DNA of 64,000 bases from positions 149,494,755-149,558,754 of the forward strand of contig NC_068983.1 of the NCBI RefSeq assembly GCF_001194135.2. Direction: 5' to 3'. This DNA comes from Octopus bimaculoides. Taxonomy: Eukaryota. This document shows positions 4,159 through 37,592 of this stretch, one piece after another. Position 1 is the first letter of the stretch; each line of letters opens with the position of its first letter. Below the pieces are notes generated by a model that saw only the letters and a list, made by a program, of their open reading frames with translations, was not told the origin of the DNA and did not search any database. Made by a program: the position numbers and the translations under genes.

Positions 4159-4159
<1 letters not shown>

Positions 4160-4192
<33 letters not shown>
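4160..4192. repeat. (GT)n microsatellite
   Basis: Uninterrupted GT run. Confidence 0.95.
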
Positions 4193-4193
<1 letters not shown>

Positions 4194-7055: not shown

Positions 7056-7563
7056 GTGAGTACTATGGAACAGTGTTGATCTTGCATGTTATGCTCTGTA
7101 GTGCATTTATTTTATAACTCATCAGCTAGTCAGTATAAACAATTTTTTAAAATACATTCAGTGCACATAAAATATTTCCTTTAAAAAATGTCTACAATGC
7201 AGCTATTTCTGCTAGCTTAATAAATAGCTTTCTAGTTACATATGAATTTATGTTTACTGAATTGTCTATAGATTTGGTAAAATTTGTGGATTTTGTATTG
7301 CTATTATTATAAGAGTATTATTATTATTGTTAATATGAAAACATTATGATTGTAATTATAAAAAATATTATTAATCAGTAATATGGCAGATTAATTCAGT
7401 AACTGTATCTTTCTCACTCAAAAATAGGCTTTGAGCCTTCTCAAATTATTATTGCTTTTCATCCTTTCGGAGTCAGATATAAATATCAGTCAAGTACTGG
7501 GGTCAATGTAATCGACTTCCCCCTCCCTTCAAAAACTGCTGGCCTTGTGCCAAAATTTGAAGC

Positions 7564-7564
<1 letters not shown>

Positions 7565-7612
<48 letters not shown>
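7565..7612. repeat. (ATT)n microsatellite, SINE tail
   Basis: About 16 ATT units directly after a SINE 3' end. Confidence 0.95.
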
Positions 7613-20100: not shown

Positions 20101-23100
20101 TGTTTGACAGATATTATATTTTATGTAGGTGGTTAATAAAAGAGTTTTAGTTGTGTACGTGAATGGAAATGGTGTTAACTCTGATGTCATTTGCATATGA
20201 AAGGTTATGTGGGATGGGGCGGGGCATGTAAGAAGGTGGTGTAGGTATGAGTAGAAGTGAGACTGGATATTTGCATTCCATTTATTACTGATTGTACATG
20301 TGTTGTAATTTACATAGGCTTGTTAACCTGAGAAATACTTCAACAGTCAGTGTTTTGTGTTATTCTTTAAGCGGGTGTTAGTATTTTACATATGACTAGA
20401 TTGCTTGCCCCACAAAAATTTGGAGCTTAATTTGTCTAAACAAGCCACTCCCTACTGTCACAAAATGTAAAATCTAATGTTTTTTTTATAGCCGTAGTCA
20501 CTCAGTAAGAAGGCCAAAATTGCATATAGTGAGATACTTTAACAATCTTTCTAATATACCATCTTTTAATACAAATCAGGAAAAAAAATAGGTTTCATAA
20601 GGAATTTATAGAACCAATTACTAAGTTAACTGGTATTTTTTGTTATTTTGTCTTTATTCACTCAATCTATCTGTTCATTCTGCAAGATTGTTGTAACTAA
20701 TCTTTTGCCTGTTATTTCTAATAACAAGACACAAAATTCACTATTAAAATGCTTTTCTGTTGTATCAGTTTTTTTGTTTTGTTTTGTTTTGTTTTTTGTG
20801 TGTGTGTGTGTTTAGTGTTTGTTTGCTTACATATTCATGCATGAAATTATGTTGTTTAATATAATTCTTTTTTACAACACTGCCATCTCTGTTCTTGTTC
20901 TACAATACTGTCATCACTACTCTTTTGATTTAAGATGCCTTGGTAGCAAAAGGGTCAGCAGTTTACATCCATCATGCTACGCCAATATCAAAAACATTTA
21001 ACTTTTTGTAGCCCTGTCCACAGTCAGTTTCTTTCTTTATTTAATTAATTTGAGTAGAGGAACAATGCATTTGACTATGGCAATGCTCAAACTGCAAATA
21101 GCTACAATGACTATTATATTAGCTTGAATGTTGGACTCAGATCTTTATTCCCTTTGCTAGACCCTTGTTAAAAGCTAGTGTTAACACACAGCTGCCTTGT
21201 TCTGTGAAAGCTGAAATAAATCCAGCATATTTTATCTACCATACGGAGACTGTCATTATACACAAATGTCTGTGTAAAAGATCCTGTATAAACTGAGTTC
21301 AAGCAACAGGATCCTCTTGCAACACTGTAATTCTTTATTGGTCCATACTTATCTGTAGTCTCTCAGTAGTTCATTCCCCACCCTGTCTATATTTCAATGA
21401 ATTTTGATGTTGTAGAAGAAAATGAAACAGTTTTACTCCATGGCCCTTCTTATCTCTAACAATCACCACTTCCATATTGGTGTACATGCCTGTTTGCCTA
21501 TCTATCTCTACCTCTACATATTAAATTGAAATTTTAACTATCATATGCTTTGCAACAGGTGTTTTCTACCCTTTTCCTTGTTTAAAGACTTATAATACAC
21601 ACATACACACACTCTTATGATTCTAAACTTTCTACACTGATAAAATATGCATTTCTGCACTCATTTAATTACTGCAGCTAGGTTGATGATGGAGGGGCAG
21701 TGCTAGAGAGCTGATGGATGATGGAAAAGACTTGAGGAGGAAATTAGGTGAAGGCTTCAGTTTCACTGAGATGTACACATCTTAAGTATTGCATATCACC
21801 AGTCATCCTGGTCCTTAATCATCTGTTCCATGAGGTTCAAGGTCCTGAGATCAGCCTTCACTGCTTTATCTCATGTCTTCATGGACCTCCCTCTTCCACA
21901 AGCTTCATCAAAGCTGTGGCATCCAGCCTTAGCTACTCCTAATTTTCCAATTTCATTGTGAAACATGGAAACGGGAAACTTTTAAAATCTCATATAGAAT
22001 TGTTTTAAATTATGTGATTCCATCTTCAGGGTACCACTGAGGTGAAGCCATCAGAAGAGTTTTCAGCAAGTGTGAGTGAAATATTTTTTTAAAAAATGAA
22101 AAATCCCAAACCTAACCACACTTGTTTTCTGTTAGCTGTGTTACTACACCTTTTTCTGCTTCTCCTTTCTCAGCTGGTTCTGTTCAATAAAATAAGTATC
22201 AGTCAGTATATTATTAAGTCAATATAATTGACAGTTTCCTCCTGCACGAGTTCCTAACCTTGTGCCTACATACCCACACATCCTCATTTTATATATTAAT
22301 CAATATGCTTGATAATGAGATTTTAGTACATTACAACTTACCTTTTTATTTAATATGTAGACAAACTTTAATCTGTCAATTCTGTCTTCTTATACTATTT
22401 TACATCCATATTTCTAACTTAGCACGACTAAAATAGCTTTTGTAATCTTGCTTACTATTAGGGCTTTTTTTTTTTTTAGTCTTCCTACCTCTCTTCCTTA
22501 GACATTAAAATAGGTATAAAGCCAGTTTATCAGCCAGCCAGACTGATTCAAACAGGGGTTTGAGCCATTGCCAAGGGATACTATATAACTGTTATAGTAG
22601 TAGAAAGAATCAAACTTCAAATGACATGGTCTGCAACTTTAACCTCACTGCTACTATCCTTTTTAATCCACGTATAACTTCTTTATAGAATACCTCATTT
22701 AATATTTTTCATTAAAAAAAAAAAATGCTTACTTTACTTATGTACAAGAAAGTTCAAACAGTACTATTTTTATATATTGCTTTTTCTATTCAAGATGTCA
22801 GAAAATTATTACTGTTGTCATATTTGCACTCACTTTGTGCTAGTCTTTTTTATATATCTCTTTACATTTGTTAATTAAACAGTATTTTTTTCTTCTTCTT
22901 CGGAAGTGTGTGTTTATGCTCATATTCATGAAGGTGATTGTGCTTATATTCATTGTGTAAATGTGTTTGAAAATATTGAAAACTGAAATAGCTTCTTTCT
23001 GTTTTTAATAGTTAATCAGCAGATATCATGATTATACCTCATGATTATGATGAAAATAAACAAGCTTATTGTGTGATGTAATTATTGCTCACATTCTATT

Positions 23101-26100
23101 GTTCTGTTTTCTAACGGAATTAGATGCACAGTCGATGACCTGGTGGTAATGGAATTATCTGAATGGCATGAATTTCTTGTCATTACAATGACCATCTAAT
23201 CTCTGATAAATAACAACATTATTTGTACTACAAAAAACCTCCAAACAACATAGGTTAGCTGAGAGGATGTAAGACCTGTTCAGAGTGACATATATCAAAA
23301 AATACCTCGGACCTACTACATATGCGTATGCACACTTACTAGTGATGGCCCCTCCATGTGGTTGCTTGGCTTGCTAAAATTAACAGCCAAATTTCCCTCA
23401 AGTCAACTTCATCAATGTAAAAAAAAAAGGACACATTGGATAATGTAGGCATATATACACTATGCCTGAGAAAAAAATAGGTTTATATTGGCTGGAACAT
23501 TCTTGAAGATCTGTCACCCCAGTCAGGACTGAACTAGAGCTAAGCAATACACAAACACACACATTAGCATTCACATGTACAGTAATACTCTATACATTTC
23601 TTTCACTAGTACTCACATACTTATCATCATCATCATCATCATTATTTAATGTCCACTGTTCCATGCTTGTGTAAGTTGGATGGAATTTTTTAGGCAGATT
23701 TTCTACAACCAGATGCTCTTCCTGTCACCAACCTTTACCTGTTTGCAAGTAAGGTAATATTCTCCCAGACCAGACATGTTTACACAGAAGATTGGAAACA
23801 AAGACACTGATTGCATGACTTTCATTTACAACTATCACGTAAAGTCAAGACAAGGAGACAATAATGTGCATGCACGCACACACACACACTATGGTTTTTT
23901 TTTTTTTTTTCATTTTCTCTCTACTAAATCCACTTACAAGGCTTTCCCAGCCTCAAACTATAGTAGAAGACACTTGCCCAAGGTGCCACACAATGGGACT
24001 GAACTTGAGACCATGTGGTTGGGAAGTAAGCTTCTCACCACATAGCTATGCCTGTGTGTTATAGTTTATATAAAAGCAATAGGTTGTGTTAATATATTGT
24101 TAGATTACTAGTTAATAAGACTCAAGTTCAAATTTATGATAAGTGTTTTGTTACGTGTTAGGACAGCATAGTTAATTCTATAGAACTAAGTTCACATAAC
24201 CAGGGAATTGGCACTTATTTCTTCACTGTCACCAAAACAGATTTATCTCTCATCTGTGTTATGCTAAACATCCACTGCCGTTCAATGAGCATGGGTTGTG
24301 GAGCACAGCTTGGCAACAAGGCCACACTTCAGTCTTTGGCAGACCACTATGAGTGTATACTCTCTGATTCCAAGCAGATGTGTGCAGTTTTTCAATGGCA
24401 CTTTGCCAGATTGTTCACAAGAAGTGATAAAATGGAAATGATGGGCTTCAATCTTACCTCAGTGACCTGCTGTTGCTATTGGCTAAACATGCAGATTAGT
24501 ATGTAAAAAAAAAAAAAAATCAGCTGTTGAAGTAGCAGACATGTTGAACAACTAACTGTATGATAGATAAATTGCCAAGACTGGACAGTCTGTTGTATGG
24601 ACTTATTATTACATGTCTGACTTCTTTGTTGTCTTGGCAGCTGTCTATTGCAATTGGTAGTAGATTGGAAGCATTCCAAATTTTGTGAACTGGTGATGCT
24701 GTTGAGGAAGAATCTGAACAAGAGAGAATAGTGGAGACCTTCAAACCCATAACTCTGCTCATCATAAAGTAAAAGATTTTAGTTTAAGATGCTTGTCAGT
24801 AACAGTTTAAGCCAGAGATGCAGACTTGTGCAACCCCCAGTTGATCAATCCACAATAATTTGTACTTCATGAAATAAAATATAATGTTAGCCGCAGTAGA
24901 TCTGGCTTTGGTAAGTTTCTAATCAATTTAGATTAGTGTGAAGCAGATGATAGGATCAACCCTCCTACCTGGCAGTTTTCCTAAGCAGAGATGGTTTTGA
25001 TCTCATTTACAGAGGCTGAATCACTACAATGTGCAGTGTCATCTGTGCTGTTGTCAAATTTAAATAGTCACCTACCAGAAGTGTTTCGTATCACATGCAC
25101 ACTTTGCCAAGGCTGCCTTCTCTCATCCCTTCAGTATATTTTACCTCCAGTGCCAAAGTATGTTGAAGATGTTGAGGGCAACCTGCTTGAACTGGGATAT
25201 GAAAGACCTATTTTTGGATGTGCAGACAACATGAGATGGGAATTGAGGTGGTCAATAGCTGTAGACATCATGGTGCTGACACACTGGGTTTAGTCATGGT
25301 CAGTACCATTGTGGAGGAGCAGTCGGAGGCATTGGGAGCATGCATTACCCAGGGCAAGGAAAAAACTTCTGTTACTGGTTGAAGACCTTAACTTGCCAGT
25401 GCATTTACTTGTTGAAAATAAATTCTACAAGCATAGCCATCTTGAAACCACCAGCAACTGTGCTTGTCTGAGATACATACAGAGTGGAAAGATTATCTGG
25501 CACACATTCGCTCAGTGTTTATGCATTGCTGATTTGTGGGTTATGTTGAACAGCTGTTATCAACTGAGTCTACCATGAAAATCAGCCCCTCATCTTCCTT
25601 TGGCGGGAGGGGTAGTATTCCTTGGCCGCATTTCCATGGCAAAGGGAGTTGTGTAATGGGATATGGTTGGAAGTGTTTTTCTTCTCATACGAAACCCTAA
25701 TCAACTACAAGTAGCACTTTAAGGAAAAGGTAAGAGCAGAAAGGGAGGTTGTATGAAAGGTCCAAGAGAGTGACAAAATTAGCATAACTAAATGGACCCA
25801 CATGAACTCTGCCACCTTGTATGTAGTTTCATAAGAACTGAAAGAAAGCACTTGTTTTAATGTGTCAAGCTAATCCCAAATTGCATGTGAGGTGCCTCAA
25901 ATTACCCTAAGAGTGTAAAAGCGCTCATTACATTCTTGGAGTGGTTGCCATTAGGAAGGGCATCCAGCTGTAGAAGACCATACCAAATTAGACTGGAGTC
26001 TGGTGCAGCCTTCCAATATGCCAGTATGGACAATGGACGTTAAATGATGATGGTTCTCTCCTCACTCATATTTTAAGAATCTTTCTTGTTCCTATTATGT

Positions 26101-27431
26101 TAATCTGTACTGTTATTACTATTCCTTATTATTTGATTATTAATGTACTTTTTTGAATGAAGTAAATACTCTACTGCTTCTTTTCTCTTATGTTACTTTG
26201 TATTTTGCCTTTATATTATCCCTTTCTTGGGCTCTTGTGAACAATAAAAAAATTGTTGTTGGACTACAGTTTGGTATTAAAATAATTGTAACTTAGCTTC
26301 AAGTTTTATTGATGTTATTTCATTCATAATAGGCGCAGGCATGGCTCTGTGGTAAGAAGCTTGCTTCCCAACCACATAGTTCTGGGTTCAGTCCCCCTGC
26401 GTGGCACCTTGGGCAAGTGTCTTCTACTATAGCCTCAGGCCGACCAAAGCCTTGTGAGTGGATTTGGTAGATGGAAGTTGAAAGCAGCCTGTCATATATA
26501 TGTATATGTATGTATATTTTATGTGAGTATGTGTTTGTCCTCCACCATCACCTGACAACCAATGTTGGTGTGTTTACCTTCCTGTAACCTAGCAGTTCAG
26601 CAAAAGAGATTGATAAAATAAGTACTAGGCTTACAAAGAATACGTCTTGGGGTCGACTGCTTCGACTAAAAACCCTTTAAGGTGGTGCTCCAGCATGACC
26701 ACAGTCAGGATGACTTAAACATGTAAAAGAATAATAATTTAATAGATTGTGGGACATAAAAATACAGTACTAGTGTAAAAGTGGTGAAAAAATAATGGAA
26801 CACACACAAAAGCAACAGAACCAGTTTATAAGTGATGCTGTTGCACAAGTATAGATGTGTGTGTGTGTGTGAATATTTATACACTGCAGACATGGCTGTG
26901 TGGTATAAAGTTTGCTTCCAACCACATGCTTCTAGGTTTAGTCCTAATGCATAACACCGTGCAAGTGGATTTGGTAGGTGCAAACTGAAAGAAACCCATT
27001 GCATATATGCATATGTATGTGTGTGTTACAGTTTCTTTGCTTTGACATTGCATGCTAGTAGTAAACTAGTGTCACCATAATGCAAGTGGTGTCCTTAATT
27101 TCCAATATTCTGTTTATGCTGGTCATGGGTAAATATTACCTTACTTGGAGACAGGTGAGGGTTGGTGATAGGAAGAGCATTGAGCCATAGAAAATCCACC
27201 TCAATAAACTCTGTCCAACTGATTCAAGCATGGAAAAGTAGATGTTGAAATGTTGATGAGGATGATGTATATATGTATATAATACAATCTTTCATTTTCC
27301 ATTTTCAGTCTCGAGTGAAAGGTAGCAAATCCAACCAGAGCCTCAATGAAAGTTTCCAGGCATCCAGTGAACCAAGTACTCCCCGATCAGAGGACAATCC
27401 TCCTCTGCCCGAAGAAAAGGTGCCCCTGTAG
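14067..27431 (+). CDS. TPD52: TPD52/D54-family (tumor protein D52-like) gene, 3' portion: join(14067-14168,15611-15671,[16536-16571],[22030-22071],27309-27431)
   Basis: Splice-consistent translation YQKTSAAMKTASEKTTSAISVLGASVSKKFDEMR/NSQTFKTVEERVENAYTNVK/.../SRVKGSKSNQSLNESFQ..PLPEEKVPL*, which matches the TPD52-family motifs YKKT..KK..D..NSPTFKSFEEKVE. All introns are GT-AG and phases agree (2,2,0,0). The N-terminal coiled-coil exons were not found in the window. Confidence 0.9.
14600..14930 (+). mobile_element. young dispersed repeat with a hammerhead-like motif (Penelope-type terminal repeat or retrozyme-like element)
   Basis: 14770-14915 is nearly identical to the reverse complement of 63855-64000 (2 mismatches in one 86-nt stretch) and contains CTGATGA..GAAA..TC. 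The left boundary is approximate. Confidence 0.65.
14746..14791 (+). ncRNA. minimal type-I hammerhead ribozyme motif
   Basis: Stem I GG(A)CCA/TGGCC; core CTGATGA plus one extra G; stem II GTCAC/GTGAT; GAAA; 2-bp stem III closed by an AA loop; CUC triplet with predicted cut after 14785. Confidence 0.55.
15611..15671 (+). CDS. TPD52: TPD52-family exon (61 nt, phase 2-0)
   Basis: ttatttcag|AAATTCTCAG...AATGTAAAG|gtgagt; encodes NSQTFKTVEERVENAYTNVK. Confidence 0.93.
16149..16397. mobile_element. piggyBac-type MITE containing an internal 36-bp inverted duplication
   Basis: TTAA then ccctttagc..gctaaaaggg. Same family as 11379 and 32416. Confidence 0.8.
16536..16571 (+). CDS. TPD52: TPD52-family 36-nt cassette microexon (TSKSIENLKDKL)
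   Basis: Perfect branch point TACTAAC at 16511-16517, acceptor ctgtttag, donor gtgagt, phase 0-0, no stop. Confidence 0.75.
17790..18110 (+). mobile_element. tRNA-derived SINE
   Basis: ggctgtgtagtgtgaag..ggttcagtcccactgtgtggcacc..gagtggatttggtag..gtactggggtcaa..ggctacag; same family as 26331. Confidence 0.75.
21775..21945 (-). mobile_element. old RTE ORF2 C-terminal remnant
   Basis: Minus strand resembles CGRGR..KT.D.AVKADLRTLNLME, homologous to 609-812. Confidence 0.6.
22030..22071 (+). CDS. TPD52: TPD52-family 42-nt cassette exon (GTTEVKPSEEFSAS)
   Basis: gattccatcttcag|GGTACC...GCAAGT|gtgagt, phase 0-0, open frame, located in unique (non-repeat) sequence. Confidence 0.7.
24950..25750 (-). 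mobile_element. highly degenerate non-LTR retrotransposon remnant (possibly L1/Tx1 ORF1)
   Basis: GC-richer coding-like block; the minus strand near 25100 resembles a decayed zinc knuckle (..G..GKVC). No intact motif. Confidence 0.3.
26331..26720 (+). mobile_element. near full-length tRNA-derived SINE
   Basis: aggcgcaggcatggctctgtggtaag (A-box-like) ... ctgggttcagtccc (B-box-like), central (TA/TG) tract, tail ..ccagcatgaccacag. Confidence 0.85.
27309..27431 (+). CDS. TPD52: TPD52-family terminal coding exon
   Basis: ctttcattttccattttcag|TCTCGAGTG...CCCCTGTAG; 40 codons plus stop, followed by an AT-rich 3' UTR. Confidence 0.9.
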   Translation, partial: SRVKGSKSNQSLNESFQASSEPSTPRSEDNPPLPEEKVPL

Positions 27432-28689
27432 ACATTGAACTTCAATAGCAGAGCTTTTTATTTCCATGAACATTTTACTTTTTCTTCCTCCTCTGTATTC
27501 CTATTACAGTCTGGTTTTATTCCAGTCTATTTCTCAAAACTTTTTTTTTTTTTCTTTTTTGGAGACAATTGCTTCCAGTTCACTAACCAAGATGAAAGCT
27601 TTGGTTGTATCATGCAATATGACTGAAGATATTTTTAACAAAAAATATTTTAAATAGTTTTAACTCCATCCCTAAAGAAAGTCAAATTTAAAAAAGAACA
27701 TGACATATTTCCCAATATTTCATTTAGCTAGTTTTAGTGATCATTAAAAAAAAAAGCATATAGATACATATAATAATACTACTACTAATAATAATAATTA
27801 TAATTTTTTTTTTATCATTCTTCCATATAATCTCTTTAGCCTTTTCTTGTGACGGATTAACTTTTTGGCATATTTATGCTGATGAACATATCTTTCTTGG
27901 CAGTTTTGCAACACTGACCCTCTTTTCCTAGACTTAATGTCTTGGTATGATTGTAAATTGTCTGTTTATGTAGGGATGTGTATAGCAAAAGGCATAAATG
28001 GTTGCCACTGGAGTTTATCTTTGGCTCCAAAACACTTTACTAACCATTGCTCTGTGCTAACACATTAAGTCAGCTTATTGATGAAGGATGAAGGATGAAG
28101 GATGAAACTTCAATTTAGATACTGTTGATGATGGTGATAATTTTCATAACAATGGTAATGAGAATAATGATAATGATGGGTGTTGATGAAAATGATGAAG
28201 GTGATGATAATAAATGGTAGAAAATGATTTCACTTGTTTGTTTAATATGTTTCTTTTTATTTACTGTCTTGAATATTTTCAAACAATTTTATGTGTGTGT
28301 GTGTGTACTTGTACACATATATTTAATGTTTCTGACATAATGACAGCATTTATAGATTGTGTACAGTTAATATTAGTCAAAGATTTAATAGAAAAAGGTA
28401 CTGAATGTTTTATAAATGAATAGAATAATCATTAAAAAAAAGCATTCATTAATTACTAAGTTCAACATTTTTTAATGGAACATGCTCTGTTTGTGTTATA
28501 TCCTTATGGATAAATGAATACACTGCAACAGTGTAATAACAATATAAACAAAACAAACAGCAATAACCACACTGAACATAACAATCTTTTAAGAACCAAC
28601 AATCAACATGCTAACTCAAACTGTAAGCTTTGAACTCCAACCCGTCTGCTTTCTTTTTCTCATGCTGGTTCTACAGGGCTCTTATTACT

Positions 28690-28940
28690 TTTGGTATTGG
28701 TACATCGAATATTTCACAGAATACTTCCATAGGAATGTCTTCCTGATCTTCCTTAGTTGGTTTATATGTCTCTTATGTTCACCGTGTGACCCTTTAATGA
28801 GATGCATCATCTTCCCAGCTTTCTTTACTGTTTCTATAGGTTTTGAAATGCACTTTATCACCTATTTCGACATATTTCGTTGGCTTTTTCATATTTCCTT
28901 TACGTCTTTTTTCTCTGGTAATAGCTTATCAAAGGTGGGT
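28690..28940 (-). mobile_element. Gypsy-like LTR retrotransposon integrase C-terminal remnant
   Basis: Minus strand reads ..EIGDKVHFKTYRNSKESWEDD.. and ..EDIPMEVFCEIFDVPIP, resembling the post-integrase region of Gypsy pol. Confidence 0.5.
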
Positions 28941-28944
28941 TTAA

Positions 28945-29165
28945 CCCTTTTGTTACCATATTTCTTTTGAGATGCTCTGTGTTTCTTTCAATTAATTTTT
29001 AATATAACCAAGAATTTAGTAAAATAACTTAGTTATCATTAAGCTAGTGTTAGGAACATAAATTGTGACTAAGGTTTGATGGAAGATTTTAATTCAAAAC
29101 TTATGGAAACAAGACATTTGTACTCGGAGCTAGGGCCGGTTTCAGCCGGGTCGGTAACGAAAGGG
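28945..29165. mobile_element. piggyBac-type MITE, second family
   Basis: TTAA on both sides (28941-44 and 29166-69); 13-bp TIR cccttt(t/c)gttacc, 12/13 match. Confidence 0.88.
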
Positions 29166-29169
29166 TTAA

Positions 29170-29640
29170 TTATCTTTGCTCTAACTCTGCAACCCTCGTG
29201 TTCAGCCTCGAGATGATGGCTGAGCACCATTCTCACAGTCAACACTCAAGAAGCAGAGCCAGATCTCATTGCCACCTCTAATAGATTTACTAAGTCCCTC
29301 TCTACACTATTTCTATTCTTAGCTAACTCCCTACTAAATCTAACCAACTCTTTTTTTTTATGGCTCTTTTGAGGGCATACCAACTTTTGTTATTAATAAT
29401 GGTCCCTGTCAATGCCCTCATCACTAACTGTCTAATCTGACTCCTGTAGGCTTCATAGGTCAGTAGTGACTTATTTAGCTTCCAGTAGCCAGATCCCTGT
29501 CTAGTCATGCTATCTACGTACAGCTTACAGGTCACCAGTTTGTGATCACTGTAGCTGACAACGGTATCACTTACTCAGAATGCTACTATTTATATGTAGT
29601 GGTCCAATCTGTTCTCGCCAGGGGGCATCGTACTCTCACA
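29170..29640 (-). mobile_element. L1/Tx1-clade LINE fragment (endonuclease C-terminus)
   Basis: ..SYSDHKLVTCKL..GSGYWKLNKSLL.. (ORF 29323-29535 plus upstream codons): the SDH and WKLN motifs of L1/Tx1 ORF2. Confidence 0.8.
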
Positions 29641-32415
29641 CAACAGTTTACTTCCTCTGAAAACTATTCTATAACTCGATGGACTAAACTATTGAGAGTA
29701 GATAAGTTTTTCTGTGAGTGACAGCATAGTGGCTGACGTGGGGCTAAACAATAACATGTATATAATAACCAGTTAGCAACATTGCATTTTATATCTCTAA
29801 GATTGACTTTTAAGTCTCAAGGATCCATTATATATTTAGCTGTAAATTGATTCAATGGGATGAAGTACAGCAGTTCACTGCTGCAAGTAGTGGAAACATT
29901 GAGAAATTAACAAGTATTGATTGAATTTAGTTACTTCCATGACAAAAGCATGCATCAGACTGGTATCTTATTCAATAAGAGACAATGCAGTGCCAGTGAT
30001 AGTTTTATGTATTTTTCAGGCTACACCTTAACAACTTAGCCATTTCTAACTCACAACCATTTTGTGGTATGTGGAACCCAATTGTTCTTAGTTCAGTGTT
30101 TTGGAAAAGACTTAATCTCTCATTAGTCTGGTGGTCATAAAATAAAAACCATTCAGAGCCTCAGCTCATTACTTTTAGCCATGGGTGGTCCTTTGTAATT
30201 AATAATTGGTTTCCTCAGGCTCAGATCCATTCATGGATTACGGAAAGATGGCTGATGGCACCAAAATTATTGTTATTTCTATTAAGGTAACAAACTGGTA
30301 GAATTATTAGAGCATTGGAAAAAATTATTTGTGGTATTTCTTCTAGTTCTTTACATTTTGAGTTCAAATTCTGCTGAGATCAACTTTGCATTTCATTCTT
30401 TTGGTGTTGATAAAATTCCAATTAAGTACTAGGTTCAGTATAATTAACTTAGCTTCTTCTCTCAAAATTGCATGCCTTGTGCCTACATGGAAAGAATTAT
30501 TACAATTATCTAAAACTTTGCAAAATCCAACCAATCTTAGGAATTATTAGAATCAATAACTTAAACAACATTCTTTGTATCCAACAAGTGATGAAATTTA
30601 AAACCAATACAGCTTCTTTAAAATTGCTTGCCAACAAAAGAACAAAAACATAATCATTCACTCACACACATCACACATGTATATATATCGCATGTTTCTG
30701 AATCACAAGGTAAACCAGCGTGTTATCCCTGCCTTTCAAAGTATTCAACAAGTAAAATGTAAATCTCACTTCAGATAAAATGATGGTCTGACACAAATTA
30801 CTTTTTCTATTGTGAAGTTAAACTTGATGCTGCTAAACAATGAGTGATTTATCAATTTCACAATACAATCACTACTTACAACAATGACTTTCACTACTAC
30901 ATGATACCAAAGATTTAACCATCTCAGCTCTGGACAAAATGTAATATCAGTTGAAGGACAACAAACTATATTGACCTCTGGACTGATTGTCTATTACTCA
31001 ATTAACTCATTCATTTACACTGCGTGTGTGTGTGAATGCTGTTACCATATCTTCATTAATATCTAAGCATAACAGTATGACATTGTTTATGTTCTGTTAA
31101 TAAAAGTCTTACAGTTCTATCAGTTTTGATGTTTGGGTTCATAGAATGAAGAATGCCTTACTTGAAAAAGATGAATATTTGTAACAGAAAAAGCATCTGG
31201 TTACAGAAAATTTATTCTCAATAAGTCTCATCTGATCCATGCCAGATTGATAAAATGGACATAAGATGAAATAACATACTCTAAAGGTGAAATTAACAGT
31301 CTGCAAAATTTCATTAAAATAAATAAAGATGCACAAATCTGATAGTTTAAAGCTAGATATAAATGGCATGCACTAACACACATACAAAAAAAAAAGAGAA
31401 AGTGTATTAAACATTCTGATGTTTTAATAAAATAAAAAATCATGTTTATAGAACAATTTATTGTTTCTTGAAACATGAAAAAAAATCAGAATTTAGAACA
31501 AATGATTAACTGTTTTTTATCGATCAAACCATGAGGCAAAAAGTTAATATGGTTTTAATACTTGTGCACAAATGTTTGGTTGAGGAAGTTCCATTTTTAA
31601 TGAGTATTCTATAGGATTAAGAACAGAAGAATACACAGGCAGATGTTTCAAAGAATGATTATGGACATATTTTGAATGAAAACTTCGGTCCCAAGCCATT
31701 ACAAAAACATTTTAGAAAGTAAGCACTTTCAATTTTCTTCAACTGAAATATGCTTACTTTGAAGCATTATGTGTTTCATTTATAAATGAAGGAGTCTATT
31801 AAATTCAGTTGTTATGAGCTATGAAGAATGTATCATTCCAGGCTCTTTGTCTGAGAATAAGTGGTATTGCCTTTTTTAGCTGCAAGGCTAATGAGGTAGG
31901 AATGGAAATGAAAGAATGATATCAGGAAAGGGGGACAATGAAAAAAAAGTACAAATTTGAGGTACAAGGTGGAAAAGCAGCAGGAGTAAGTCAGAACTAG
32001 AGATGGAAAATAGAAAGACAAGATAGTATTGAAGATGNNNNNNNNNNGGGGGGAGAGTAAAGAAAGTGGAAGACGATGCACACACCTAGAAGATTATTTA
32101 ATAAAAATTTAACTGAAAATTATTAATAGAGTGTTAAAGAACTAAAAGTCTTTAATATTTAGGGGATTAAAATTTATGATTTCCTATTCAAAAACAAGAG
32201 TCCATTGAGAAAGATTTGGCAGCTATATTGAACTGGTCAATCAGAAACTCCTTCTATAACTTGAACACACAGGTAGTAAATTGGCAAGGCTGCTGAAATG
32301 TAGAACAAAATACTTAGTGGTATTTGTTCTGATGTCAATTTTGCCCTTCTGTCTTTTGAGTTGATAAAATAAAAGTACCTGTCCAAAATAGTTGATTGTG
32401 GTATTTGCACTGGCT

Positions 32416-33896
32416 CCCTTTTTAGCATTCAGATTATTCTGTCTAATCTAATGCTTATTTATTCACATTGTTTTGAATTAATTATGCATTACTTGTAGCT
32501 TTGAAATTTTGATGATGTGATTGTACATTATTAGAATGACATTTGTAGGGTAGGTGTTAGAAGTGAGATCTGGCCAGTTTGAACTTACAGGGTATGCCAT
32601 AAAGAATCCTCGATTGATTTTTAGTCATACTTTTTAGTAAAAGGCATAAAAGCACGAGTTCTTTAGGATTTAATTAAATATGGTCATGTAACATATTAAG
32701 ATATGTTTCATTCAATATGTTCACCTTTAACCTTCACAATCACCCAAAAACGGTCAAGAACAGAGTCACACAAATGCCAGACAACCTCTTCACTTAAACG
32801 ATCCCATGACATGACTAAGGCTTTCTTCAGAGTGGTGATATTTTTGTAGGAAACTCTTGAAATATCCCTTTCTAGAATGGACCAAATAGCAAAGTCCATA
32901 GGGTTGACATCTGGACTGGAATGGGGCCACACATTCTTGTCCCAGAACCTGCTGAAATGGTTCCTGCACTTCTGCTGTGTCACATCAGACATATGAGGAG
33001 CACCATCTTGCATGAACATATAATTATCTCCAAATGTTTTGGTCACTCATCGCAAAACATTATCCTCCAACATTTTCATGCAAATTACCGAATTGACCTT
33101 CAATCCCTCTTTAATGAACACCAGAGATTTTCCACCATCAGATGCTGCCCAAACCATCACACTGGCAGGTTTCATTCATTGAAACACCTTCAGGAGCAGG
33201 CAGCATTTGACCTTGTGGCCAAAACCCTGTCATTCTGGGTGTTTGCTATACCTTCCATAGTCAATATTTTTTGTCCAACCAGAGGAAGACATTGTCACTT
33301 GTGCTTTGAATCTCCTCTGCCATTTTCTTGCACCTGTCCAATTGCTTTGCTTTAGAAGCAGCCAAAATTAGGTGTCAATATTGGAATTTTAATGACTTAC
33401 AATTTAAGTCTTCATGCATGACCCATCATATGGTTGTCTGGGAGATATTGAGACTTTTAGCCATTTGCCTCATACTCTGCTGTGGATTTCATGACACGCT
33501 CTTTCAGATGACATTCACAAATTGTTTCATCCTTACGGATCATTTTCAGCTAGGAATGGTCTTGCTGTTGATTGAACCTGTCTTACTGAGCATTTCATGA
33601 CATTATAGACTTATTTTGGGATCAACACCAACCTTTGAAGTCACATCTTTGGTGCTATGTCCTACCTTTTTCAGAGCTACAATCTCACTTCACTCGTTAG
33701 CTGCCATGTTGAAATGTTTTACTCACTGAATGTACATGAACAACTGAATGTCGAGGAGCACATTTTAATTATTTTTGTGCAATTTCAACTAAATTTAATA
33801 AAAGTCTTATTTAAATGGTTGAGAATTATGTATGGCATATCTTGTAATACAGGTTGAATATTTCAACCAGATATGGCTGGTTTAAATGCTAAAAGG
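32416..33896. mobile_element. piggyBac-type MITE interrupted by a maT transposon
   Basis: 32416-32585 and 33847-33896 join into the 16149-type consensus; the right end is aatgctaaaagg+TTAA. Confidence 0.8.
32588..33844 (-). mobile_element. Tc1/mariner-superfamily element, maT (DD37D) type, about 1.26 kb, decayed
   Basis: TA target duplication at 32586-87 and 33845-46; TIR CAGGGTATGCCATA vs CAAGATATGCCATA. Transposase QDGAPH..WPHSSPDVNPMD has 36 residues between the last two D, i.e. 37 if the missing Ala of GAPAH is restored. Confidence 0.88.
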
Positions 33897-33918
33897 TTAA
33901 GCACTTATTTAGTATCAG

Positions 33919-34015
33919 TTTTCACCATATCAATTGCAACCTGGTCACTGACAAGGTTCCACTGAATCCTTGTAGAACCTTGTCAGTGAACAGGTCACAG
34001 TTGGTGTGGTGAAAA
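33919..34015. repeat. 97-nt inverted repeat (hairpin), copy 1
   Basis: Arms TTTTCACCATATCAATTGCAACCTGGTCACTGACAAGGTTCCA and TAGAACCTTGTCAGTGAACAGGTCACAGTTGGTGTGGTGAAAA. Confidence 0.9.
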
Positions 34016-35462
34016 TTTTGACACCAAATAAGAAGTGTTGAAGTGAAGTTAACAATTTTTGTGTATTTTGAAAGGTTGATGTGTTGTCTTCTAAGTTGTG
34101 TTTGTTTATATTTGTAGAATTTAGTTGAAATCATTCCACAGGTAAAATGTACAGTAGTCTTGTCAAAGATCTTGTGCACCCACAGGCGAAACTCAGAGTA
34201 GCAAGAGACTGACTCAACCAAAATAAAGGATATTATTAATCTCTACTATGGTATTGAGTACTTTATTTTCCAACAATTAACACTAAACAGATATGTATGT
34301 ATGTATGTCATTATCATCATCTTTCAATATCTATCCTTCATACCAGCATATGTTGGATGATTTGATAGGATCCAACAAACCAGAGGACTGCATTGAGCTC
34401 CAGTGTCTGCTTGGTATGATTTCTTTGGTTGGAATCTCTTCTTAATGCCAACCACTTTACAGTGTCTTCGGTGCTTTTTTTTTTTTATGACACCAGCATA
34501 AGTGAAAGTTATGAAGTAACTTACAAGAAAAAGAAGAAACCTTGAGAGGATGTGGTATTGAGAAGCTAAAGCATGGTAAAGGAAGAGATGCCTTGCCATA
34601 AAGGAGATAAACGGTTACTTCACATTATATAGGAGTTGGTGGCAGTAACTGAAAGAAGTTACAGAAGTTGGTGATGAGATTTTGGAACATACTGTCAAGG
34701 TACAAGAAGGTAAGTATAAGACAGAATACAGATTGAGGATGGAAAGTTGTGGGTGGATAAATTCATAGGAGTGTGAATGACAGATGGTTAAGGATTGGGG
34801 TAGAGTTTAATATAATGAATGATGTATAAAGGTGGAAATGTGGCTGATTGACGATAAATATCAGTGTGTAGAATAAAGTAAAAACAAAAATCTCAGGAAA
34901 GAGATAAGTGGCAATACAGGAAGGGTGAAGGGCAGCTGTATAATAATCCTGTATACAGACCAGAAAATAAGAAGGGAAAGAGAGATGTACAGGGACAGCA
35001 ATGGAGGTCAGAGATACATAGTGGTGACTGGAGTGAGTGAGGAATAAAGGTGGGAGCAATGACAACAGATATGAGGGTGGGTAAGAAGTAGCTCAGAGGA
35101 GAGGGAGAGATACCTGAAAGTGCAGAAAGGGAGGTGTAGTGGAAAACTGAATGTGGGATAGATGTTAAAGAAAGTGGTTACAGGGAGAGGGAGAGGTAAC
35201 TAGTAGCACCAAGAATTATGAGTAGATTCTGCTGTCATATGATTACAGCAGCTAAATAATGCACTTGTTAGAGACATTCAAAGGATGATTACACACACAC
35301 ACACACAAAATAGTAATAATGGTCGTAGCCATAATGTTTTTGATCATAGGTTGATTCTGTAAATTTGTCTGGCATTAATCAACGGCCCTTTCTTGTCTTA
35401 TATTTCATTCTTGTCTTATATATTTCATTCATGGCTGGTTTAAATGCTAAAGGATTAAGCAC

Positions 35463-35559
35463 TTTTCACCATACCAATTGCAACCTGGTCACTGACAAGG
35501 TTCCACTGAATCCCTGTGGAACTTTGTCAGTGACCAGGTTGCAGTTGGTGTGGTGAAAA
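35463..35559. repeat. 97-nt inverted repeat (hairpin), copy 2
   Basis: 44-bp stem with a 9-nt loop; the three non-Watson-Crick positions are G-U on the + strand. 90/97 identical to copy 1. Confidence 0.92.
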
Positions 35560-36357
35560 TTTTGACACCAAATAATTATATTTCATTCAAAATGAATAAT
35601 CAATATAAAGAAAAGTCACATGAGAAAACAAATTAAAATTTTCAGTGATACGACCATTAATGTGTTTCTGCAGATAATCGATCTTATGGTTACAACTTTT
35701 CTTAAATAAGCAAAACTTTGCATTGTGAATTTATTTTACAAACATAAGCTATAACAATACCAGATTAAATTTATTTATTTTTTGGCATGGGTGTAATTTA
35801 AACACTGAATGATGTGATAACTTCAAAGGACAAAGTAAGTATTCATTACCACTTTTTGGTTCCCCTACATTAATAACTTTTCCATTTGGTTTTTGCCTAG
35901 AATGAATCTCTGGATATTTTTCTAGTCTTTTAAGTTATTCACAAAAAAATCTATATACTGCTCAAATCATTTTGTTTAGCAGCATTAAAGATAGAAATTA
36001 CGCATCGCTGAGAAGGTCGAATAAGATAGAAACATGTCCAGCGTTGTTCCCGTACAGCAAAGTACAGTCCACTCCCTCTCCTAAATACTCACTACATTTT
36101 TACATTTTTTTCGAGCGGAGCACCTCTTCTGTCTTTCCTGATCAGGATTGATCATTAATCTAATTATTAACGCATTTTATAACACAGATTGCGACGGAGT
36201 TTTGGAGTAGTTGTACTTGGAAGTATCACATCTTTTTTGGCAATCTTTCGTTATGACTTGCAGAACTGTCATTTGAATCAGTTGGTTGGATCAACGGGTT
36301 GTTTGTTAAGTTCCGTAAATTTTTTTTTATGGAAATTGATTCTGAAAAAAAAAGAAA

Positions 36358-36836
36358 GGATCTTTTTTAAAACGGGGGCCACATTTTTCAATAATGTTTT
36401 ACGTAGTGCTTTTGGTACCGAAAGACTTTCAAACTTCGTATANNNNNNNNNNNNNNNNNNNNNNNNNNNNNNNNNNNNNNNNNNNNNNNNNNNNNNNNNN
36501 NNNNAATTGTCTTCGTTTTATTTGCTTTTTTCATTTTAAATTTGCTTTAACCCTAACCCTAACCCTAACTCTAACCCTAGGGTTAGGGTTAGGGTTAATT
36601 GTTTCAGAATCGTTTGTTTATGTAGTCGGCACTTAATGTATATCGCCTGAATGGACGTCAGTGATTGGTTGAAATTACAGAAATACGACAACTTTAACAT
36701 GGAATAATTTATGGATTTCTTTTTTTTTTAAGAAGACTAAGAGAAAAAGATGTTTTATATGACACATTCTACCAGTGATCCAAGTTTCAAAGTGTTTCGT
36801 TAATGAAAAATGTGGCCCCCGTATTAAAAAAGATCC
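36358..36836. mobile_element. MITE with 39-bp TIRs and a central telomere-repeat palindrome
   Basis: GGATCTTTTTTAAAACGGGGGCCACATTTTTCAATAATG matches the reverse complement of 36798-36836 at 36/39. Flanks are A-rich. The element contains an N gap and (CCCTAA)n(TTAGGG)n at 36548-36598. Confidence 0.85.
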
Positions 36837-36979
36837 AAAAAAAAAAAACTTCAGTCGTTAACACTTTTCTCTTCCACTTTTTTCTTTCCCTTGTGTTTTG
36901 ATTCTTCTAGGTATGGATATTTCAAACTTCTGCTCTAACGGGATTATTCACGATTCTTGTAAAATCGTAAATATTTCTT

Positions 36980-37320
36980 GTTTTTGTTGGCACTCCGTCG
37001 CTTACGACGTTGAGCGTTCCAGTTGATCAGATCAACGGAACAGCCTGCTCGTGAAATTAACGTGCAAGGCGGCTGAGCACTCCACAGACACGTGTACCTT
37101 TAACGTAGTTCTCGGGGATATTCAGCGTGACAAAGCTGACCCTTTGAATTACAGGCACAATAGAAACAGGAAGTAAGAGTGAGAGAAAGTTGTGGTGGAA
37201 GAGTACCGTGAAACTTTAGGTGTTTTTCGCTCAATAAACACTCACAACGCCCGGTCTGGGAATCGAAACCGCGATCCTATGACCGCGAGTCCGCTGCCCT
37301 AACCACTGGGCCATTGCGCC
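36980..37320 (-). mobile_element. tRNA-derived SINE (third family), CpG-intact, just upstream of PSMF1
   Basis: Reverse complement begins GGCGCAATGGCCCAGTGG (A box) ... GGTTTCGATTCC (B box); homologous to 51521-51900. Confidence 0.9.
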
Positions 37321-37592
37321 TTCTCTATAGAAATGGATCATTCTTTAATCTCCTTCAGTCGCTTGAATATACAAATACAATATACTTTCAATTCTGTAAG
37401 AAATCTAATGAAGATACTTTTGCATAATTGATAATCAGCGAAATGTCACCGGTTTCTTCGAGAAAGAAATAAACAAACAATAAAGCTAGATAAAATATTC
37501 ATAACATTTTTGATTTACTAGTATTTAAATTTAATATATTAATTTCATTTGTTGCTTTTATCAATAAAATTAAGTTTCTTTACGACATTGGT

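What the first reader, a model, noticed from the sequence alone, without database searches (positions are those of the whole stretch)
33873..35575. Twin 97-nt near-perfect hairpins 1.5 kb apart with asymmetric arm conservation: candidate new miRNA/hpRNA pair
Seen: 33919-34015 and 35463-35559 each fold into a stem of about 44 bp with a 9-nt loop. Copy 2 is fully paired on the + strand (3 G-U); copy 1 has 3 G-U and 4 mismatches, and one position is G-C in one copy and G-U in the other. The copies differ at 7 of 97 positions: 1 in the left arm, 5 in the right arm, 1 in the loop, so 31 nt of the left arm (CAATTGCAACCTGGTCACTGACAAGGTTCCA) are identical. The duplicated unit also includes about 30 nt of a MITE terminus upstream and ttttgacaccaaataa downstream, so the duplication postdates the MITE. 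I recognise no known miRNA in it. Established: coleoid cephalopods have many lineage-specific miRNAs and very high ADAR activity; on the - strand the G-U pairs become A-C mismatches, which ADAR favours. Caveat: the arm asymmetry and G-U bias are only suggestive at these numbers.
Basis: partly seen in the sequence, partly recalled or inferred. Interest (0 to 1): 0.7.

Follow-up and report, generated by a model that had tools for sequence, protein, structure and literature searches.

The report
Repeat-derived RNA hairpins, one ADAR-edited
The two near-perfect hairpins are real, but they are fold-backs built from interspersed repeats; the first lies in the far-downstream tail of a highly expressed gene's transcript and shows ADAR-type A-to-G changes, an ordinary situation in octopus-like genomes, and nothing here shows a new microRNA gene.

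Summary
The hairpins at 33919-34015 and 35463-35559 have the stated pairing and differences, with fold z-scores of -11 and -16. The miRNA/hpRNA reading is not supported.

- **Repeat origin.** The right arm and tail belong to an interspersed repeat (R) with about 300 copies. The 34 nt upstream are the 3' end of a repeat with more than 10,000 copies (S). Only the fold-back itself is low-copy: two here plus at least one diverged locus.
- **Copy 2 is secondary.** It is a 145-146-nt partial copy flanked by a 12-13-bp target-site duplication.
- **Copy 1 is longer than reported.** It spans 33905-34031.
- **Transcription.** Copy 1 lies in a + strand RNA block running about 6 kb past the main poly(A) site of a highly expressed gene. 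The block ends about 200 nt after the hairpin.
- **Editing.** In four RNA libraries, 12 adenosines in and near hairpin 1 read as G. These include all five A:C mismatches of the stem. DNA runs show A at these sites. The inverted ends of a nearby mariner-like element are edited too.
- **No miRNA evidence.** RNA contigs span the intact hairpin. Rfam gives only generic sub-threshold hits on both strands. The arm asymmetry is not significant (p = 0.22).
- **Untested.** No small-RNA data could be examined.

The parts
33905..34031 (+). Hairpin 1, full palindrome. It comprises the left extension 33905-18, left arm 33919-62, loop 33963-71, right arm 33972-34015 and tail 34016-31.
   Evidence: MFE of 33901-34036 is -69.9 kcal/mol. 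It becomes -97.8 when the 7 edited A are modelled as G.
35463..35559 (+). Hairpin 2, with a 44-bp fully paired stem (3 G-U) and a 9-nt loop.
33873..34031 (+). Duplicated unit, copy 1, the probable source. It holds the last 28 nt of repeat S, then AGCAC, then the full palindrome.
   Evidence: Repeat R continues past 34031 only here.
35431..35576 (+). Duplicated unit, copy 2. It is a 145-146-nt partial copy that lacks the 14-nt left extension and stops at the end of the palindrome.
35419..35430 (.). Upstream target-site duplication of copy 2, TATATTTCATTC.
   Evidence: In organism C a 2-nt deletion at 35417 makes it a perfect 13-mer, TTATATTTCATTC.
35577..35588 (.). Downstream target-site duplication of copy 2, TATATTTCATTC.
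33972..34075 (+). Copy of interspersed repeat R. It supplies the right arm, the tail and about 45 nt beyond. There are about 300 genomic copies at 80% identity or more.
   Evidence: depth up to about 4100 against about 13 for single copy in X1. Pieces align from 33972-84 to 34059-69.
35516..35576 (+). Repeat R portion of copy 2, truncated at 35576. There are 60-130 genomic copies at 90% identity or more.
   Evidence: The loose-end consensus after 35576 is AAATGTTTAAGTGAAGTT..., which matches what follows copy 1.
33848..33900 (+). 3' end of abundant repeat S, at about 11,000-34,000 times single-copy depth.
   Evidence: loose ends behind 33900 are random AT-rich sequence.
35431..35458 (+). The last 28 nt of repeat S, carried along in copy 2.
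32585..33847 (-). Decayed Tc1/mariner-like element that splits the S copy (S 5' part about 32290-32584). It has 27-nt terminal inverted repeats, TA flanks and a transposase remnant ORF at 32708-33046.
   Evidence: joints 32584 to 33870; Sleeping Beauty SB100X, E = 0.008.
33911..33999 (+). A-to-G RNA-DNA differences inside hairpin 1: 33911, 33914, 33938, 33954, 33974, 33997, 33999. Five of them are the A of an A:C mismatch.
   Evidence: X13, X14, X16, X18; partners. DNA runs show A.
33824..33828 (+). A-to-G differences in the right mariner inverted repeat (33824, 33825, 33828). Matching ones lie in the left repeat (32587, 32602, 32603).
27309..28547 (+). Last exon of the host gene. The stop codon is at 27429-31 and AATAAA at 28209-14. 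A poly(A) tail is seen after 28227, and high depth continues to 28547.
28548..34260 (+). Continuous low-level + strand RNA downstream of the gene. It is either an extended 3' UTR or read-through. It contains hairpin 1 and ends near AATAAA 34222-27.
   Evidence: In X13 the depth is 65-127, falling to 4-10 after about 34207-34260.

Best explanation
The two hairpins are fold-backs made of transposable-element sequence. They are not dedicated small-RNA genes.

**Origin (inferred).** An R-family repeat lay next to the 3' end of an abundant S-family repeat. Its first ~60 nt became duplicated in inverted orientation, giving palindrome 1 (33905-34031). A 145-nt piece of that locus was later copied 1.4 kb downstream. 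The piece held 28 nt of S, the junction and the palindrome up to AAATAA. Its 12-13-bp target-site duplication and A-rich end fit reverse-transcriptase-mediated insertion of a 5'-truncated fragment of the local transcript best. Both copies predate the split from two related species. Since then they have drifted at about the neutral rate, mostly by C-to-T and G-to-A changes.

**What happens now (shown).** Hairpin 1 is transcribed on the + strand as part of a long RNA that continues about 6 kb beyond the main poly(A) site of a highly expressed gene. It forms a ~58-bp duplex. Its adenosines read as G in RNA at high levels, above all at every A:C mismatch. This pattern is the signature of ADAR deamination to inosine, which would restore pairing at those mismatches. 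The inverted ends of the neighbouring mariner-like element behave the same way. Editing here therefore looks like a generic consequence of double-stranded RNA in an expressed transcript.

**Hairpin 2.** It lies beyond the point where RNA depth drops about ten-fold. I have no evidence that it is processed or edited.
For: **Repeat origin**
- Depth over the right arm and tail is up to about 300 times single copy at 80% identity or more. At 90% or more it is 60-130 times.
- Other genomic copies continue past the unit with the sequence that follows copy 1 (loose ends after 35576).
- Left-arm depth is only 5-20 times single copy. Part of that is R copies lying in reverse (loose end before 35472).
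- The S terminus is at 11,000-34,000 times single-copy depth.

**Copy 2 is an insertion**
- TATATTTCATTC flanks it on both sides. In organism C the repeat is a perfect 13-mer.
- Copy 2 lacks the left extension and the R sequence beyond AAATAA.

**Age**
- Contigs from organisms B and C cover both copies. Flank divergence is 2.6-3.5%.
- The hairpin 2 differences that could be seen are 1 in B and 3 in C.

**Transcription**
- Runs X13, X14, X16 and X18 show a spliced exon at 27309, a poly(A) tail at 28227, and exon depth of 2700-8200 against about 50 in the intron.
- Contigs are continuous from 28518 to 33896. Contigs at 34053-34207 have depth 62-67, then depth falls to 4-10.

**Editing**
- 16 of 20 differences across 31500-37400 are A>G. 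In 33780-34260, 13 of 15 are A>G.
- At 33911, 33914, 33938, 33954 and 33974, G makes up 67-100% of contig depth in three runs. At 33974, X18 also reads G.
- DNA runs X1 and X2 show no such G at those five sites, and X21 lists none. At 33997 many R-family copies carry G in DNA, so the editing call there is less secure.
- Every A opposite C is among the edited sites.
- The mariner inverted repeats carry A>G on both arms.

**Context**
- Octopus has more than a million hyper-editing sites, mostly in double-stranded RNA formed by repeats (PMC5625713).
Against: - RNA and DNA come from different individuals. The G states are also the ancestral states of the palindrome, so polymorphism is not strictly excluded.
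- Contig depths are averages over a whole contig. The position of the RNA 3' end (34207-34260) and the editing levels are therefore approximate.
- Three 2026 RNA-seq runs show essentially no reads on either left arm. Transcription thus depends on tissue or library type.
- A retrocopy landing 1.4 kb from its source is an unusual coincidence. The unit also has no real poly(A) tail, so the copying mechanism is uncertain.
- The TSD motif resembles an adjacent 18-nt tandem duplication (35392-35429).
- No small-RNA data were available, so Dicer or Drosha products are untested.
Confidence: 0.8

Rival explanations
1. One or both hairpins are precursors of a lineage-specific miRNA, or a miRNA-like small RNA derived from a transposable element. 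Such an RNA would be cut by Drosha and Dicer from the long + strand transcript.
For: - The stem and loop dimensions are compatible with a precursor.
- The fold-back has a low copy number.
- Both copies are present in two related species.
- The + strand is transcribed over hairpin 1.
- From my own knowledge, palindromic repeats can become miRNAs, for example Made1 giving mir-548.
Against: - No small-RNA evidence could be obtained.
- A 44-58-bp near-perfect stem is longer and more perfect than typical animal pri-miRNA stems.
- Contigs span the whole hairpin at a depth like the flanks.
- Heavy editing of the stem is seen.
- Divergence across species is about neutral, and the arm asymmetry gives p = 0.22.
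- There is no Rfam family at gathering score, and 37 families give generic hits on both strands.
- The 90 novel octopus miRNA families are reported never to share a scaffold with one another (PMC9699675). That paper's supplements hold no sequences that could be compared.
Confidence: 0.07
2. The A>G differences are genomic polymorphisms, with an ancestral G haplotype in the animals used for RNA. They would then not be RNA editing.
For: - At the five A:C mismatches, G is the inferred ancestral state.
- Organism B has G at 33974 in its DNA.
- RNA and DNA runs are from different animals.
- Run X17, of uncertain type, has an unedited contig over 33871-34210.
Against: - Three DNA data sets of organism A show A, while four RNA libraries from two studies show G.
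- The differences are almost only A>G along 6 kb (16 of 20). They cluster on both arms of two independent inverted repeats, the hairpin and the mariner ends.
- Partial levels at several sites (67-92%) and multiple contig isoforms fit editing better than a haplotype.
Confidence: 0.05
3. Hairpin 1 is a selected cis-acting element of the long 3' UTR isoform. It could act as a binding platform for double-stranded-RNA-binding proteins, a nuclear-retention or stability signal, or an aid to 3'-end formation about 200 nt downstream. Editing would tune the duplex.
For: - It sits about 190-230 nt upstream of the drop in RNA depth and of AATAAA 34222-27.
- It is retained in related species.
- Editing would convert all A:C mismatches to I:C pairs.
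Against: - Conservation is no better than in the flanks.
- Copy 1 has accumulated 6 mismatches.
- The neighbouring mariner ends are edited in the same way, so editing needs no special function.
- No functional data exist.
Confidence: 0.1

Closest known systems
Hyper-edited inverted-repeat or palindromic transposable elements in transcripts, such as inverted Alu pairs in human 3' UTRs and palindromic Harbinger repeats in frog (PMC5625713)
   Same: - A long, nearly perfect intramolecular duplex made of repeat sequence inside a Pol II transcript.
- Clustered, strand-consistent A-to-G RNA-DNA differences.
- A preference for A opposite C.
- Octopus is reported to have an exceptionally high load of such sites.
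   Different: - The duplex is a very short fold-back (about 58 bp, 9-nt loop) of part of one repeat. It is not two full neighbouring repeat copies.
- ADAR dependence was not tested.
miRNAs derived from palindromic MITEs, such as human mir-548 from Made1 (recalled from my own knowledge)
   Same: A near-perfect short palindrome of transposable-element origin that would fold into a miRNA-like hairpin if transcribed.
   Different: - The palindrome here is not itself a mobile, high-copy MITE with terminal inverted repeats and a TA duplication. It has 2-4 copies.
- No small RNAs have been shown.
Drosophila hpRNA endo-siRNA loci
   Same: A transcribed inverted repeat forming long double-stranded RNA.
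   Different: - hpRNAs need a Dicer-2/AGO2-type siRNA pathway, and a survey of 32 molluscs, including an octopus, found no evidence for one (PMC12479628).
- hpRNA stems are usually hundreds of bp long.
LINE-mediated retrocopies and 5'-truncated retroposed transcript fragments
   Same: Copy 2 has a 12-13-bp target-site duplication, an arbitrary 5' start inside another repeat, an A-rich 3' end, and a transcribed source.
   Different: - It has no poly(A) tail.
- It is inserted only 1.4 kb from its source.
- The enzyme responsible is unknown.

Membership tests
Animal miRNA gene (MirGeneDB-type criteria) | Discrete 20-26-nt reads from both arms with 2-nt 3' overhangs and homogeneous 5' ends | not testable with these tools
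   No miRNA-Seq run is served. Logan contigs use 31-letter words and cannot hold small RNAs.
Animal miRNA gene (MirGeneDB-type criteria) | Imperfect hairpin of about 35 bp with a loop of at least 8 nt | tested here: inconclusive
   The loop is 9 nt. The stem is 44 bp and fully paired in copy 2, and about 58 bp in copy 1. That is longer and more perfect than usual.
Animal miRNA gene (MirGeneDB-type criteria) | Match to a described family | tested here: not met
   No Rfam family reaches its gathering score in the window. 37 miRNA models score 16-56 bits on both strands, which is a generic palindrome effect. MirGeneDB itself could not be searched.
Animal miRNA gene (MirGeneDB-type criteria) | Present in a second octopus species (the criterion of PMC9699675) | tested here: met
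   This is shown at the DNA level only. Contigs of organisms B and C cover both copies.
hpRNA / endo-siRNA locus | A dedicated siRNA pathway in the host, and 21-nt siRNAs from the stem | not testable with these tools
   The literature reports no siDicer or siAgo and no endo-siRNA signal in molluscs (PMC12479628). Small RNAs were not examined here.
ADAR-edited double-stranded RNA (hyper-edited repeat) | The duplex is part of an expressed RNA | tested here: met
   Contigs of X13, X14, X16 and X18 cover hairpin 1. The same runs show splicing and poly(A) of the upstream gene.
ADAR-edited double-stranded RNA (hyper-edited repeat) | Clustered A-to-G RNA-DNA differences of one strand, absent from DNA | tested here: met
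   12 A>G sites lie in 33824-34052, and 13 of 15 differences are A>G. DNA runs show A at the diagnostic sites. The animals differ between the RNA and DNA runs.
ADAR-edited double-stranded RNA (hyper-edited repeat) | Edited A lies in the duplex, with a preference for A:C mismatches | tested here: met
   All five A:C mismatches and two A-U pairs are edited.
ADAR-edited double-stranded RNA (hyper-edited repeat) | Dependence on ADAR, with inosine chemically shown | not testable with these tools
   This needs a knock-down or an inosine-specific assay.
Palindromic MITE | The palindrome itself is a high-copy mobile unit with terminal inverted repeats and a short fixed TSD | tested here: not met
   Left-arm depth is only 5-20 times single copy and is partly reverse R copies. 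The mobilised unit includes 28 nt of S and has a 12-13-bp TSD.
Retroposed fragment (target-primed reverse transcription) | Variable-length TSD, A-rich 3' end, 5' truncation, transcribed source | tested here: inconclusive
   The TSD, the arbitrary 5' start and the transcribed source are met. The 3' end is only AAATAA, with no poly(A) tail, and no empty site was available.

The most novel reading that the evidence does not exclude
The edited fold-back could be more than a passive ADAR substrate. One reading is that hairpin 1, or the perfect hairpin 2, yields a young, lineage-specific miRNA-like small RNA born from a repeat. Another is that editing-restored pairing makes hairpin 1 a regulated element of the long 3' UTR isoform of a very highly expressed gene.
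Probability: 0.08. Interest if true: 0.5.

Novelty: new member of a known kind. Interest (0 to 1): 0.22.

Why it matters
The value is mostly as a clean, fully dissected example. It shows how a partial inverted duplication of a repeat creates a ~58-bp RNA duplex in a transcribed region. It shows that G-to-A decay of the stem is masked at the RNA level, because the A of every A:C mismatch reads as G. It also shows that such a unit can be copied locally. For genome scans the lesson is practical: a low-copy, near-perfect hairpin with an apparently conserved arm is not evidence for a miRNA until each arm's repeat membership and the small-RNA data have been checked. If small RNAs were found after all, this would be a snapshot of miRNA birth from a repeat in a cephalopod.

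Tried and rejected
**Searches that gave nothing usable**
- The supplements of the octopus miRNA paper (PMC9699675) were searched for the arm sequences. They hold only names and 8-mer target sites, no precursor sequences, so the negative result says nothing.
- A full-text search for 12-mers of the arms returned only unrelated primers.
- A search for miRNA-Seq runs listed none.

**Protein searches**
- Pfam found nothing for the transposase remnant, even at E = 10. A PDB sequence search gave Sleeping Beauty SB100X at E = 0.008.
- A search with the host gene's 52 C-terminal residues found only one unnamed 52-aa protein. The gene stays unidentified.

**Ideas considered and rejected**
- *Fossilised editing.* The idea is that copy 2 is a retrocopy of edited RNA and carries G where copy 1 has edited A. 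Copy 2 has G at two such sites (33974 and 33997 equivalents). But organism B has G at 33974 in copy 1, and half of the R copies have G at 33997. So G is ancestral there. At 33938, 33954 and 33999, copy 2 has A.
- *Tandem duplication of a 1.55-kb unit.* Only 145-159 nt are shared.
- *RNA reads on the copy 2 right arm in the 2026 runs.* They carry C>T and T>C letters not seen in the DNA of this locus. They come from other R copies.

**Caveat on contigs**
- Logan contigs around the hairpins are partly chimeric. One 144-nt contig in X2 is intermediate between the two copies, so I did not use such contigs to assign alleles.
Full report
**1. The observation**

Both hairpins exist as described. The inverted-repeat search gives 44-nt arms separated by 9 nt at 33919-33962/33972-34015 and at 35463-35506/35516-35559. 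The direct-repeat search gives the duplicated unit as 33873-33906 plus 33916-34031, against 35431-35464 plus 35460-35575.

As RNA, the + strands fold at -60 and -81 kcal/mol. The z-scores are -11.4 and -15.7, and none of 200 shuffles folds as well. The - strands fold somewhat less well, at -56.7 and -68.3.

A script confirmed the counts. Copy 1 has 37 Watson-Crick pairs, 3 G-U and 4 mismatches. Copy 2 has 41 Watson-Crick pairs and 3 G-U. The copies differ at 7 positions: 1 in the left arm, 1 in the loop, 5 in the right arm. A BLAST of the unit against the 64-kb window finds only these two copies.

**2. Hairpin 1 is longer than reported**

Copy 1 has 14 nt that copy 2 lacks (33905-33918, TTATTTAGTATCAG). 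These are a diverged reverse complement of the tail TTTTGACACCAAATAA, whose reverse complement is TTATTTGGTGTCAAAA. Folding 33901-34036 pairs 33904-33910 with 34026-34032. The palindrome therefore runs 33905-34031, about 58 bp. This also explains why the duplicated unit ends at AAATAA: that is the end of the palindrome.

**3. What the pieces are**

I laid DNA contigs of four runs on the locus, covering the window's species (organism A) and related organisms B and C.

- *Repeat S.* The 53 nt before 33900 reach 11,000-34,000 times single-copy depth. In most genomic copies that repeat ends at 33900/33901 and is followed by unrelated AT-rich sequence.
- *Repeat R.* The right arm, the tail and about 45 further nt (33972 to about 34075) reach about 300 times single-copy depth at 80% identity or more. 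At 90% or more, 35516-35576 reaches 60-130 times. Other R copies continue past the end of copy 2 with AAATGTTTAAGTGAAGTT..., which is what follows copy 1. Upstream of the arm they continue with a different sequence (...GATGCAGTAGAATCA).
- *The left arm.* It reaches only 5-20 times single-copy depth. Part of that is R copies lying in reverse: the loose end before 35472 is the reverse complement of the R tail.

So the fold-back itself is rare. There are the two copies here and at least one diverged third locus, seen as contigs covering 33938-34024 with 12 differences and 5 gaps. It is nevertheless built from a repeat.

**4. The neighbourhood**

The S copy next to hairpin 1 is split by a decayed Tc1/mariner-like element at 32585-33847.
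- It has 27-nt terminal inverted repeats at 32585-32611 and 33821-33847, with TA on each side.
- Contigs from other S copies jump from 32584 to about 33870.
- Its ORF remnant at 32708-33046 on the - strand resembles the Sleeping Beauty transposase catalytic domain (E = 0.008). Pfam was silent.

**5. Copy 2 is a secondary insertion**

Copy 2 is flanked by TATATTTCATTC at 35419-35430 and 35577-35588. In organism C a 2-nt deletion at 35417 makes the repeat a perfect 13-mer, TTATATTTCATTC.

Copy 2 starts at an arbitrary point 28 nt before the end of S. It lacks the left extension and stops at AAATAA(T), whereas R runs on at copy 1. Copy 1, or a locus like it, is therefore the source.

A 12-13-bp duplication, an arbitrary 5' start, an A-rich end and a transcribed source fit reverse-transcriptase-mediated insertion best. 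However, there is no poly(A) tail, the insertion is only 1.4 kb from its source, and the duplicated motif resembles an adjacent 18-nt tandem repeat. I hold this step as inference.

**6. Conservation**

Contigs of organisms B and C cover both copies at the orthologous place. Flank divergence is about 2.6-3.5%.
- In hairpin 2, organism B shows one visible difference, 35523 T>C.
- Organism C shows three: 35516 G>C, 35523 T>C and 35541 G>C. Its contig has two further differences that I could not locate.
- These counts are about what the flank divergence predicts.
- C at 35523 is ancestral, so the G-U pair there is a recent C-to-T change in organism A.

The 1:5 arm asymmetry gives a two-sided binomial p of 0.22. 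The two adjacent right-arm differences (CA in copy 1, TG in copy 2) look like alternative decays of one CpG.

Counting all non-Watson-Crick positions in both copies gives 6 G-U against 5 A:C on the + strand. There is thus no sign that + strand pairing is preferentially kept. C-to-T and G-to-A mutation in a genome of 35% G+C explains the pattern.

**7. Transcription**

Runs X13, X14 and X16 (one study) and X18 (another) are listed as of unknown kind, but they behave as RNA.
- All four hold a contig that joins 16542-16570 to 27308/9, which is a splice.
- X18 has a contig ending in a poly(A) run after 28227.
- Depth is 2700-8200 on 27308-28547, against about 50 in the upstream intron.

The exon encodes ...SRVKGSKSNQSLNESFQASSEPSTPRSEDNPPLPEEKVPL followed by a stop at 27429-31, and AATAAA lies at 28209-14. 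A protein search found only one unnamed relative, so the gene is not identified.

Downstream of that exon the same runs give continuous contigs at depth 65-127 in X13, up to 33896. They continue across the hairpin and on to 34207, at 62-67 in X13 and X14. After that, depth is 4-10. The drop coincides with AATAAA at 34222-27.

Hairpin 1 thus lies about 200 nt before the end of either a long 3' UTR isoform or a read-through RNA. Which of the two it is cannot be told from contigs. Hairpin 2 lies in the low-depth part. Three 2026 RNA-seq runs, about 6% of each read, show essentially no reads on either left arm. Expression therefore depends on tissue or library type.

**8. Editing**

Across 31500-37400, 16 of 20 differences between these RNA contigs and the window are A>G. 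In 33780-34260, 13 of 15 are A>G.

In and around hairpin 1 the sites are 33824, 33825, 33828, 33911, 33914, 33938, 33954, 33974, 33997, 33999, 34051 and 34052. At 33911, 33914, 33938, 33954 and 33974, G makes up 67-100% of contig depth in three runs. At 33974, X18 also reads G.

DNA runs of the same species show A at those five sites. X1 has a 159-nt contig identical to the window over 33873-34031. X2 shows no G at 10% or more there, and the raw reads of X21 list none. At 33997 about half of the DNA depth already reads G because of other R copies, so that site is less secure.

Placed on the structure:
- 33911, 33914, 33938, 33974 and 33997 are the A of the five A:C mismatches of the extended stem.
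- 33954 and 33999 are A-U pairs.
- With G as a stand-in for inosine, the stem becomes continuous except for one G:A mismatch. The computed energy goes from -69.9 to -97.8 kcal/mol. This is an overestimate, since I:C is weaker than G:C.

The three sites at 33824-28 lie in the right mariner inverted repeat. A>G at 32587, 32602 and 32603 (X16) lie in the left one. Editing thus marks every inverted repeat of this transcript, not the hairpin in particular. Because A>G is on the + strand, the RNA is the + strand, the same strand as the gene.

The main caveat is that the RNA and DNA come from different animals, and G is the ancestral state at the mismatch sites. The near-exclusive A>G spectrum over 6 kb, the partial levels at several sites and the agreement of two studies make polymorphism unlikely.

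**9. Is it a miRNA or hpRNA?**

Nothing positive was found.
- At gathering scores, Rfam finds nothing in the whole window.
- At relaxed thresholds, 37 different miRNA models (mir-580, MIR4387, MIR845 and others) match hairpin 2 on both strands at 16-56 bits, all below their thresholds. This is how hairpin models respond to any long palindrome.
- Contigs run through the whole hairpin, for example X16 over 33871-34207 with 7 A>G. Their depth is comparable with the flanks. That is not what efficient Drosha cleavage would leave.
- The octopus miRNA study required presence in two species. It reports that none of its 90 novel families shares a scaffold with another (PMC9699675). Its held supplements contain no sequences, so I could not compare directly.
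- For hpRNAs, a survey of 32 molluscs, including an octopus, found no siRNA-type Dicer or Argonaute and no endo-siRNA signal (PMC12479628).
- Small-RNA reads could not be examined with the tools available. The idea is therefore unsupported rather than disproved.

**10. Comparison and verdict**

The closest known thing is the hyper-edited repeat duplex. Porath et al. report more than a million hyper-editing sites in octopus nervous tissue, mostly in long, nearly perfect double-stranded RNA formed by inverted or palindromic repeats (PMC5625713). This locus meets the features I could test: it is expressed, it forms a duplex, and it carries clustered one-strand A>G differences that DNA runs lack and that favour A:C mismatches. 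ADAR dependence could not be tested.

It is a new instance of a known kind. The miRNA/hpRNA reading and the argument from arm conservation do not hold.

Noticed in passing
window 27309-28547 (+), with upstream exon 16536-16571: Terminal exons of a very highly expressed + strand gene. RNA contig depth is 2700-8200. The intron 16572-27308 is 10.7 kb. The C-terminus is ...KDKLSRVKGSKSNQSLNESFQASSEPSTPRSEDNPPLPEEKVPL*. AATAAA lies at 28209-14, and a poly(A) tail is seen after 28227. The only relative found is one unnamed 52-aa protein, so the gene is unidentified.
   Followed up: partly
window 32585-33847 (-): Decayed Tc1/mariner-like element, about 1.26 kb, with 27-nt terminal inverted repeats and TA flanks. 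It is inserted into a copy of repeat S. Its two ends carry A>G RNA differences, so they appear to pair in the transcript over 1.2 kb.
   Followed up: yes
window about 16200-16398 (+) and 32290-32584 + 33848-33900: Copies of the very abundant repeat S (more than 10,000 per genome). The copy at 16200-16398 contains its own ~33-bp internal palindrome (about 16216-16290, CAGTCACGTCATCGAAGTCTCAAAGTCATGAGA ... TCTCATGACTTTGAGACTTTGATGATGTGACTG). It also holds two similar sub-terminal motifs (GATCTGGCCAGTTTG / GATGTGACCAGTTTAAATG). I did not classify the repeat family.
   Followed up: partly
window 36548-36579: Interstitial telomere-like repeat, (TAACCC) x 5.3.
   Followed up: no
window 36228-37400: Repeats with extreme depth in RNA contigs, up to about 436,000 in X13 at 37016-37212. 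No tRNA gene or Rfam family was found there. This is probably a very abundant expressed SINE-like element.
   Followed up: partly
window 33903/34031 and 35461/35577 (joints in DNA contigs): One contig each in X1, X2 and X20 joins the end of S (…AGCA) directly to the reverse complement of the R tail (TTATTTGGTGTCAAAATTTTCACC…) and does not continue into a second arm. This is another locus with the same S-inverted-R junction, in both organism A and organism B. It hints that the S plus inverted-R arrangement predates the fold-back.
   Followed up: partly
window 1470-2048 (-): Reverse-transcriptase fragment (Pfam RVT_1, E = 2.5e-11) of a retroelement. Adjacent ORFs at 930-1464 on the same strand may belong to it.
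   Followed up: no
window 34170-34520 and 35290-35310: Further interspersed repeats between the two hairpins, at hundreds of copies, plus a (CA)n/(TA)n microsatellite at about 35290-35307. They account for many spurious joints in the read layouts.
   Followed up: no
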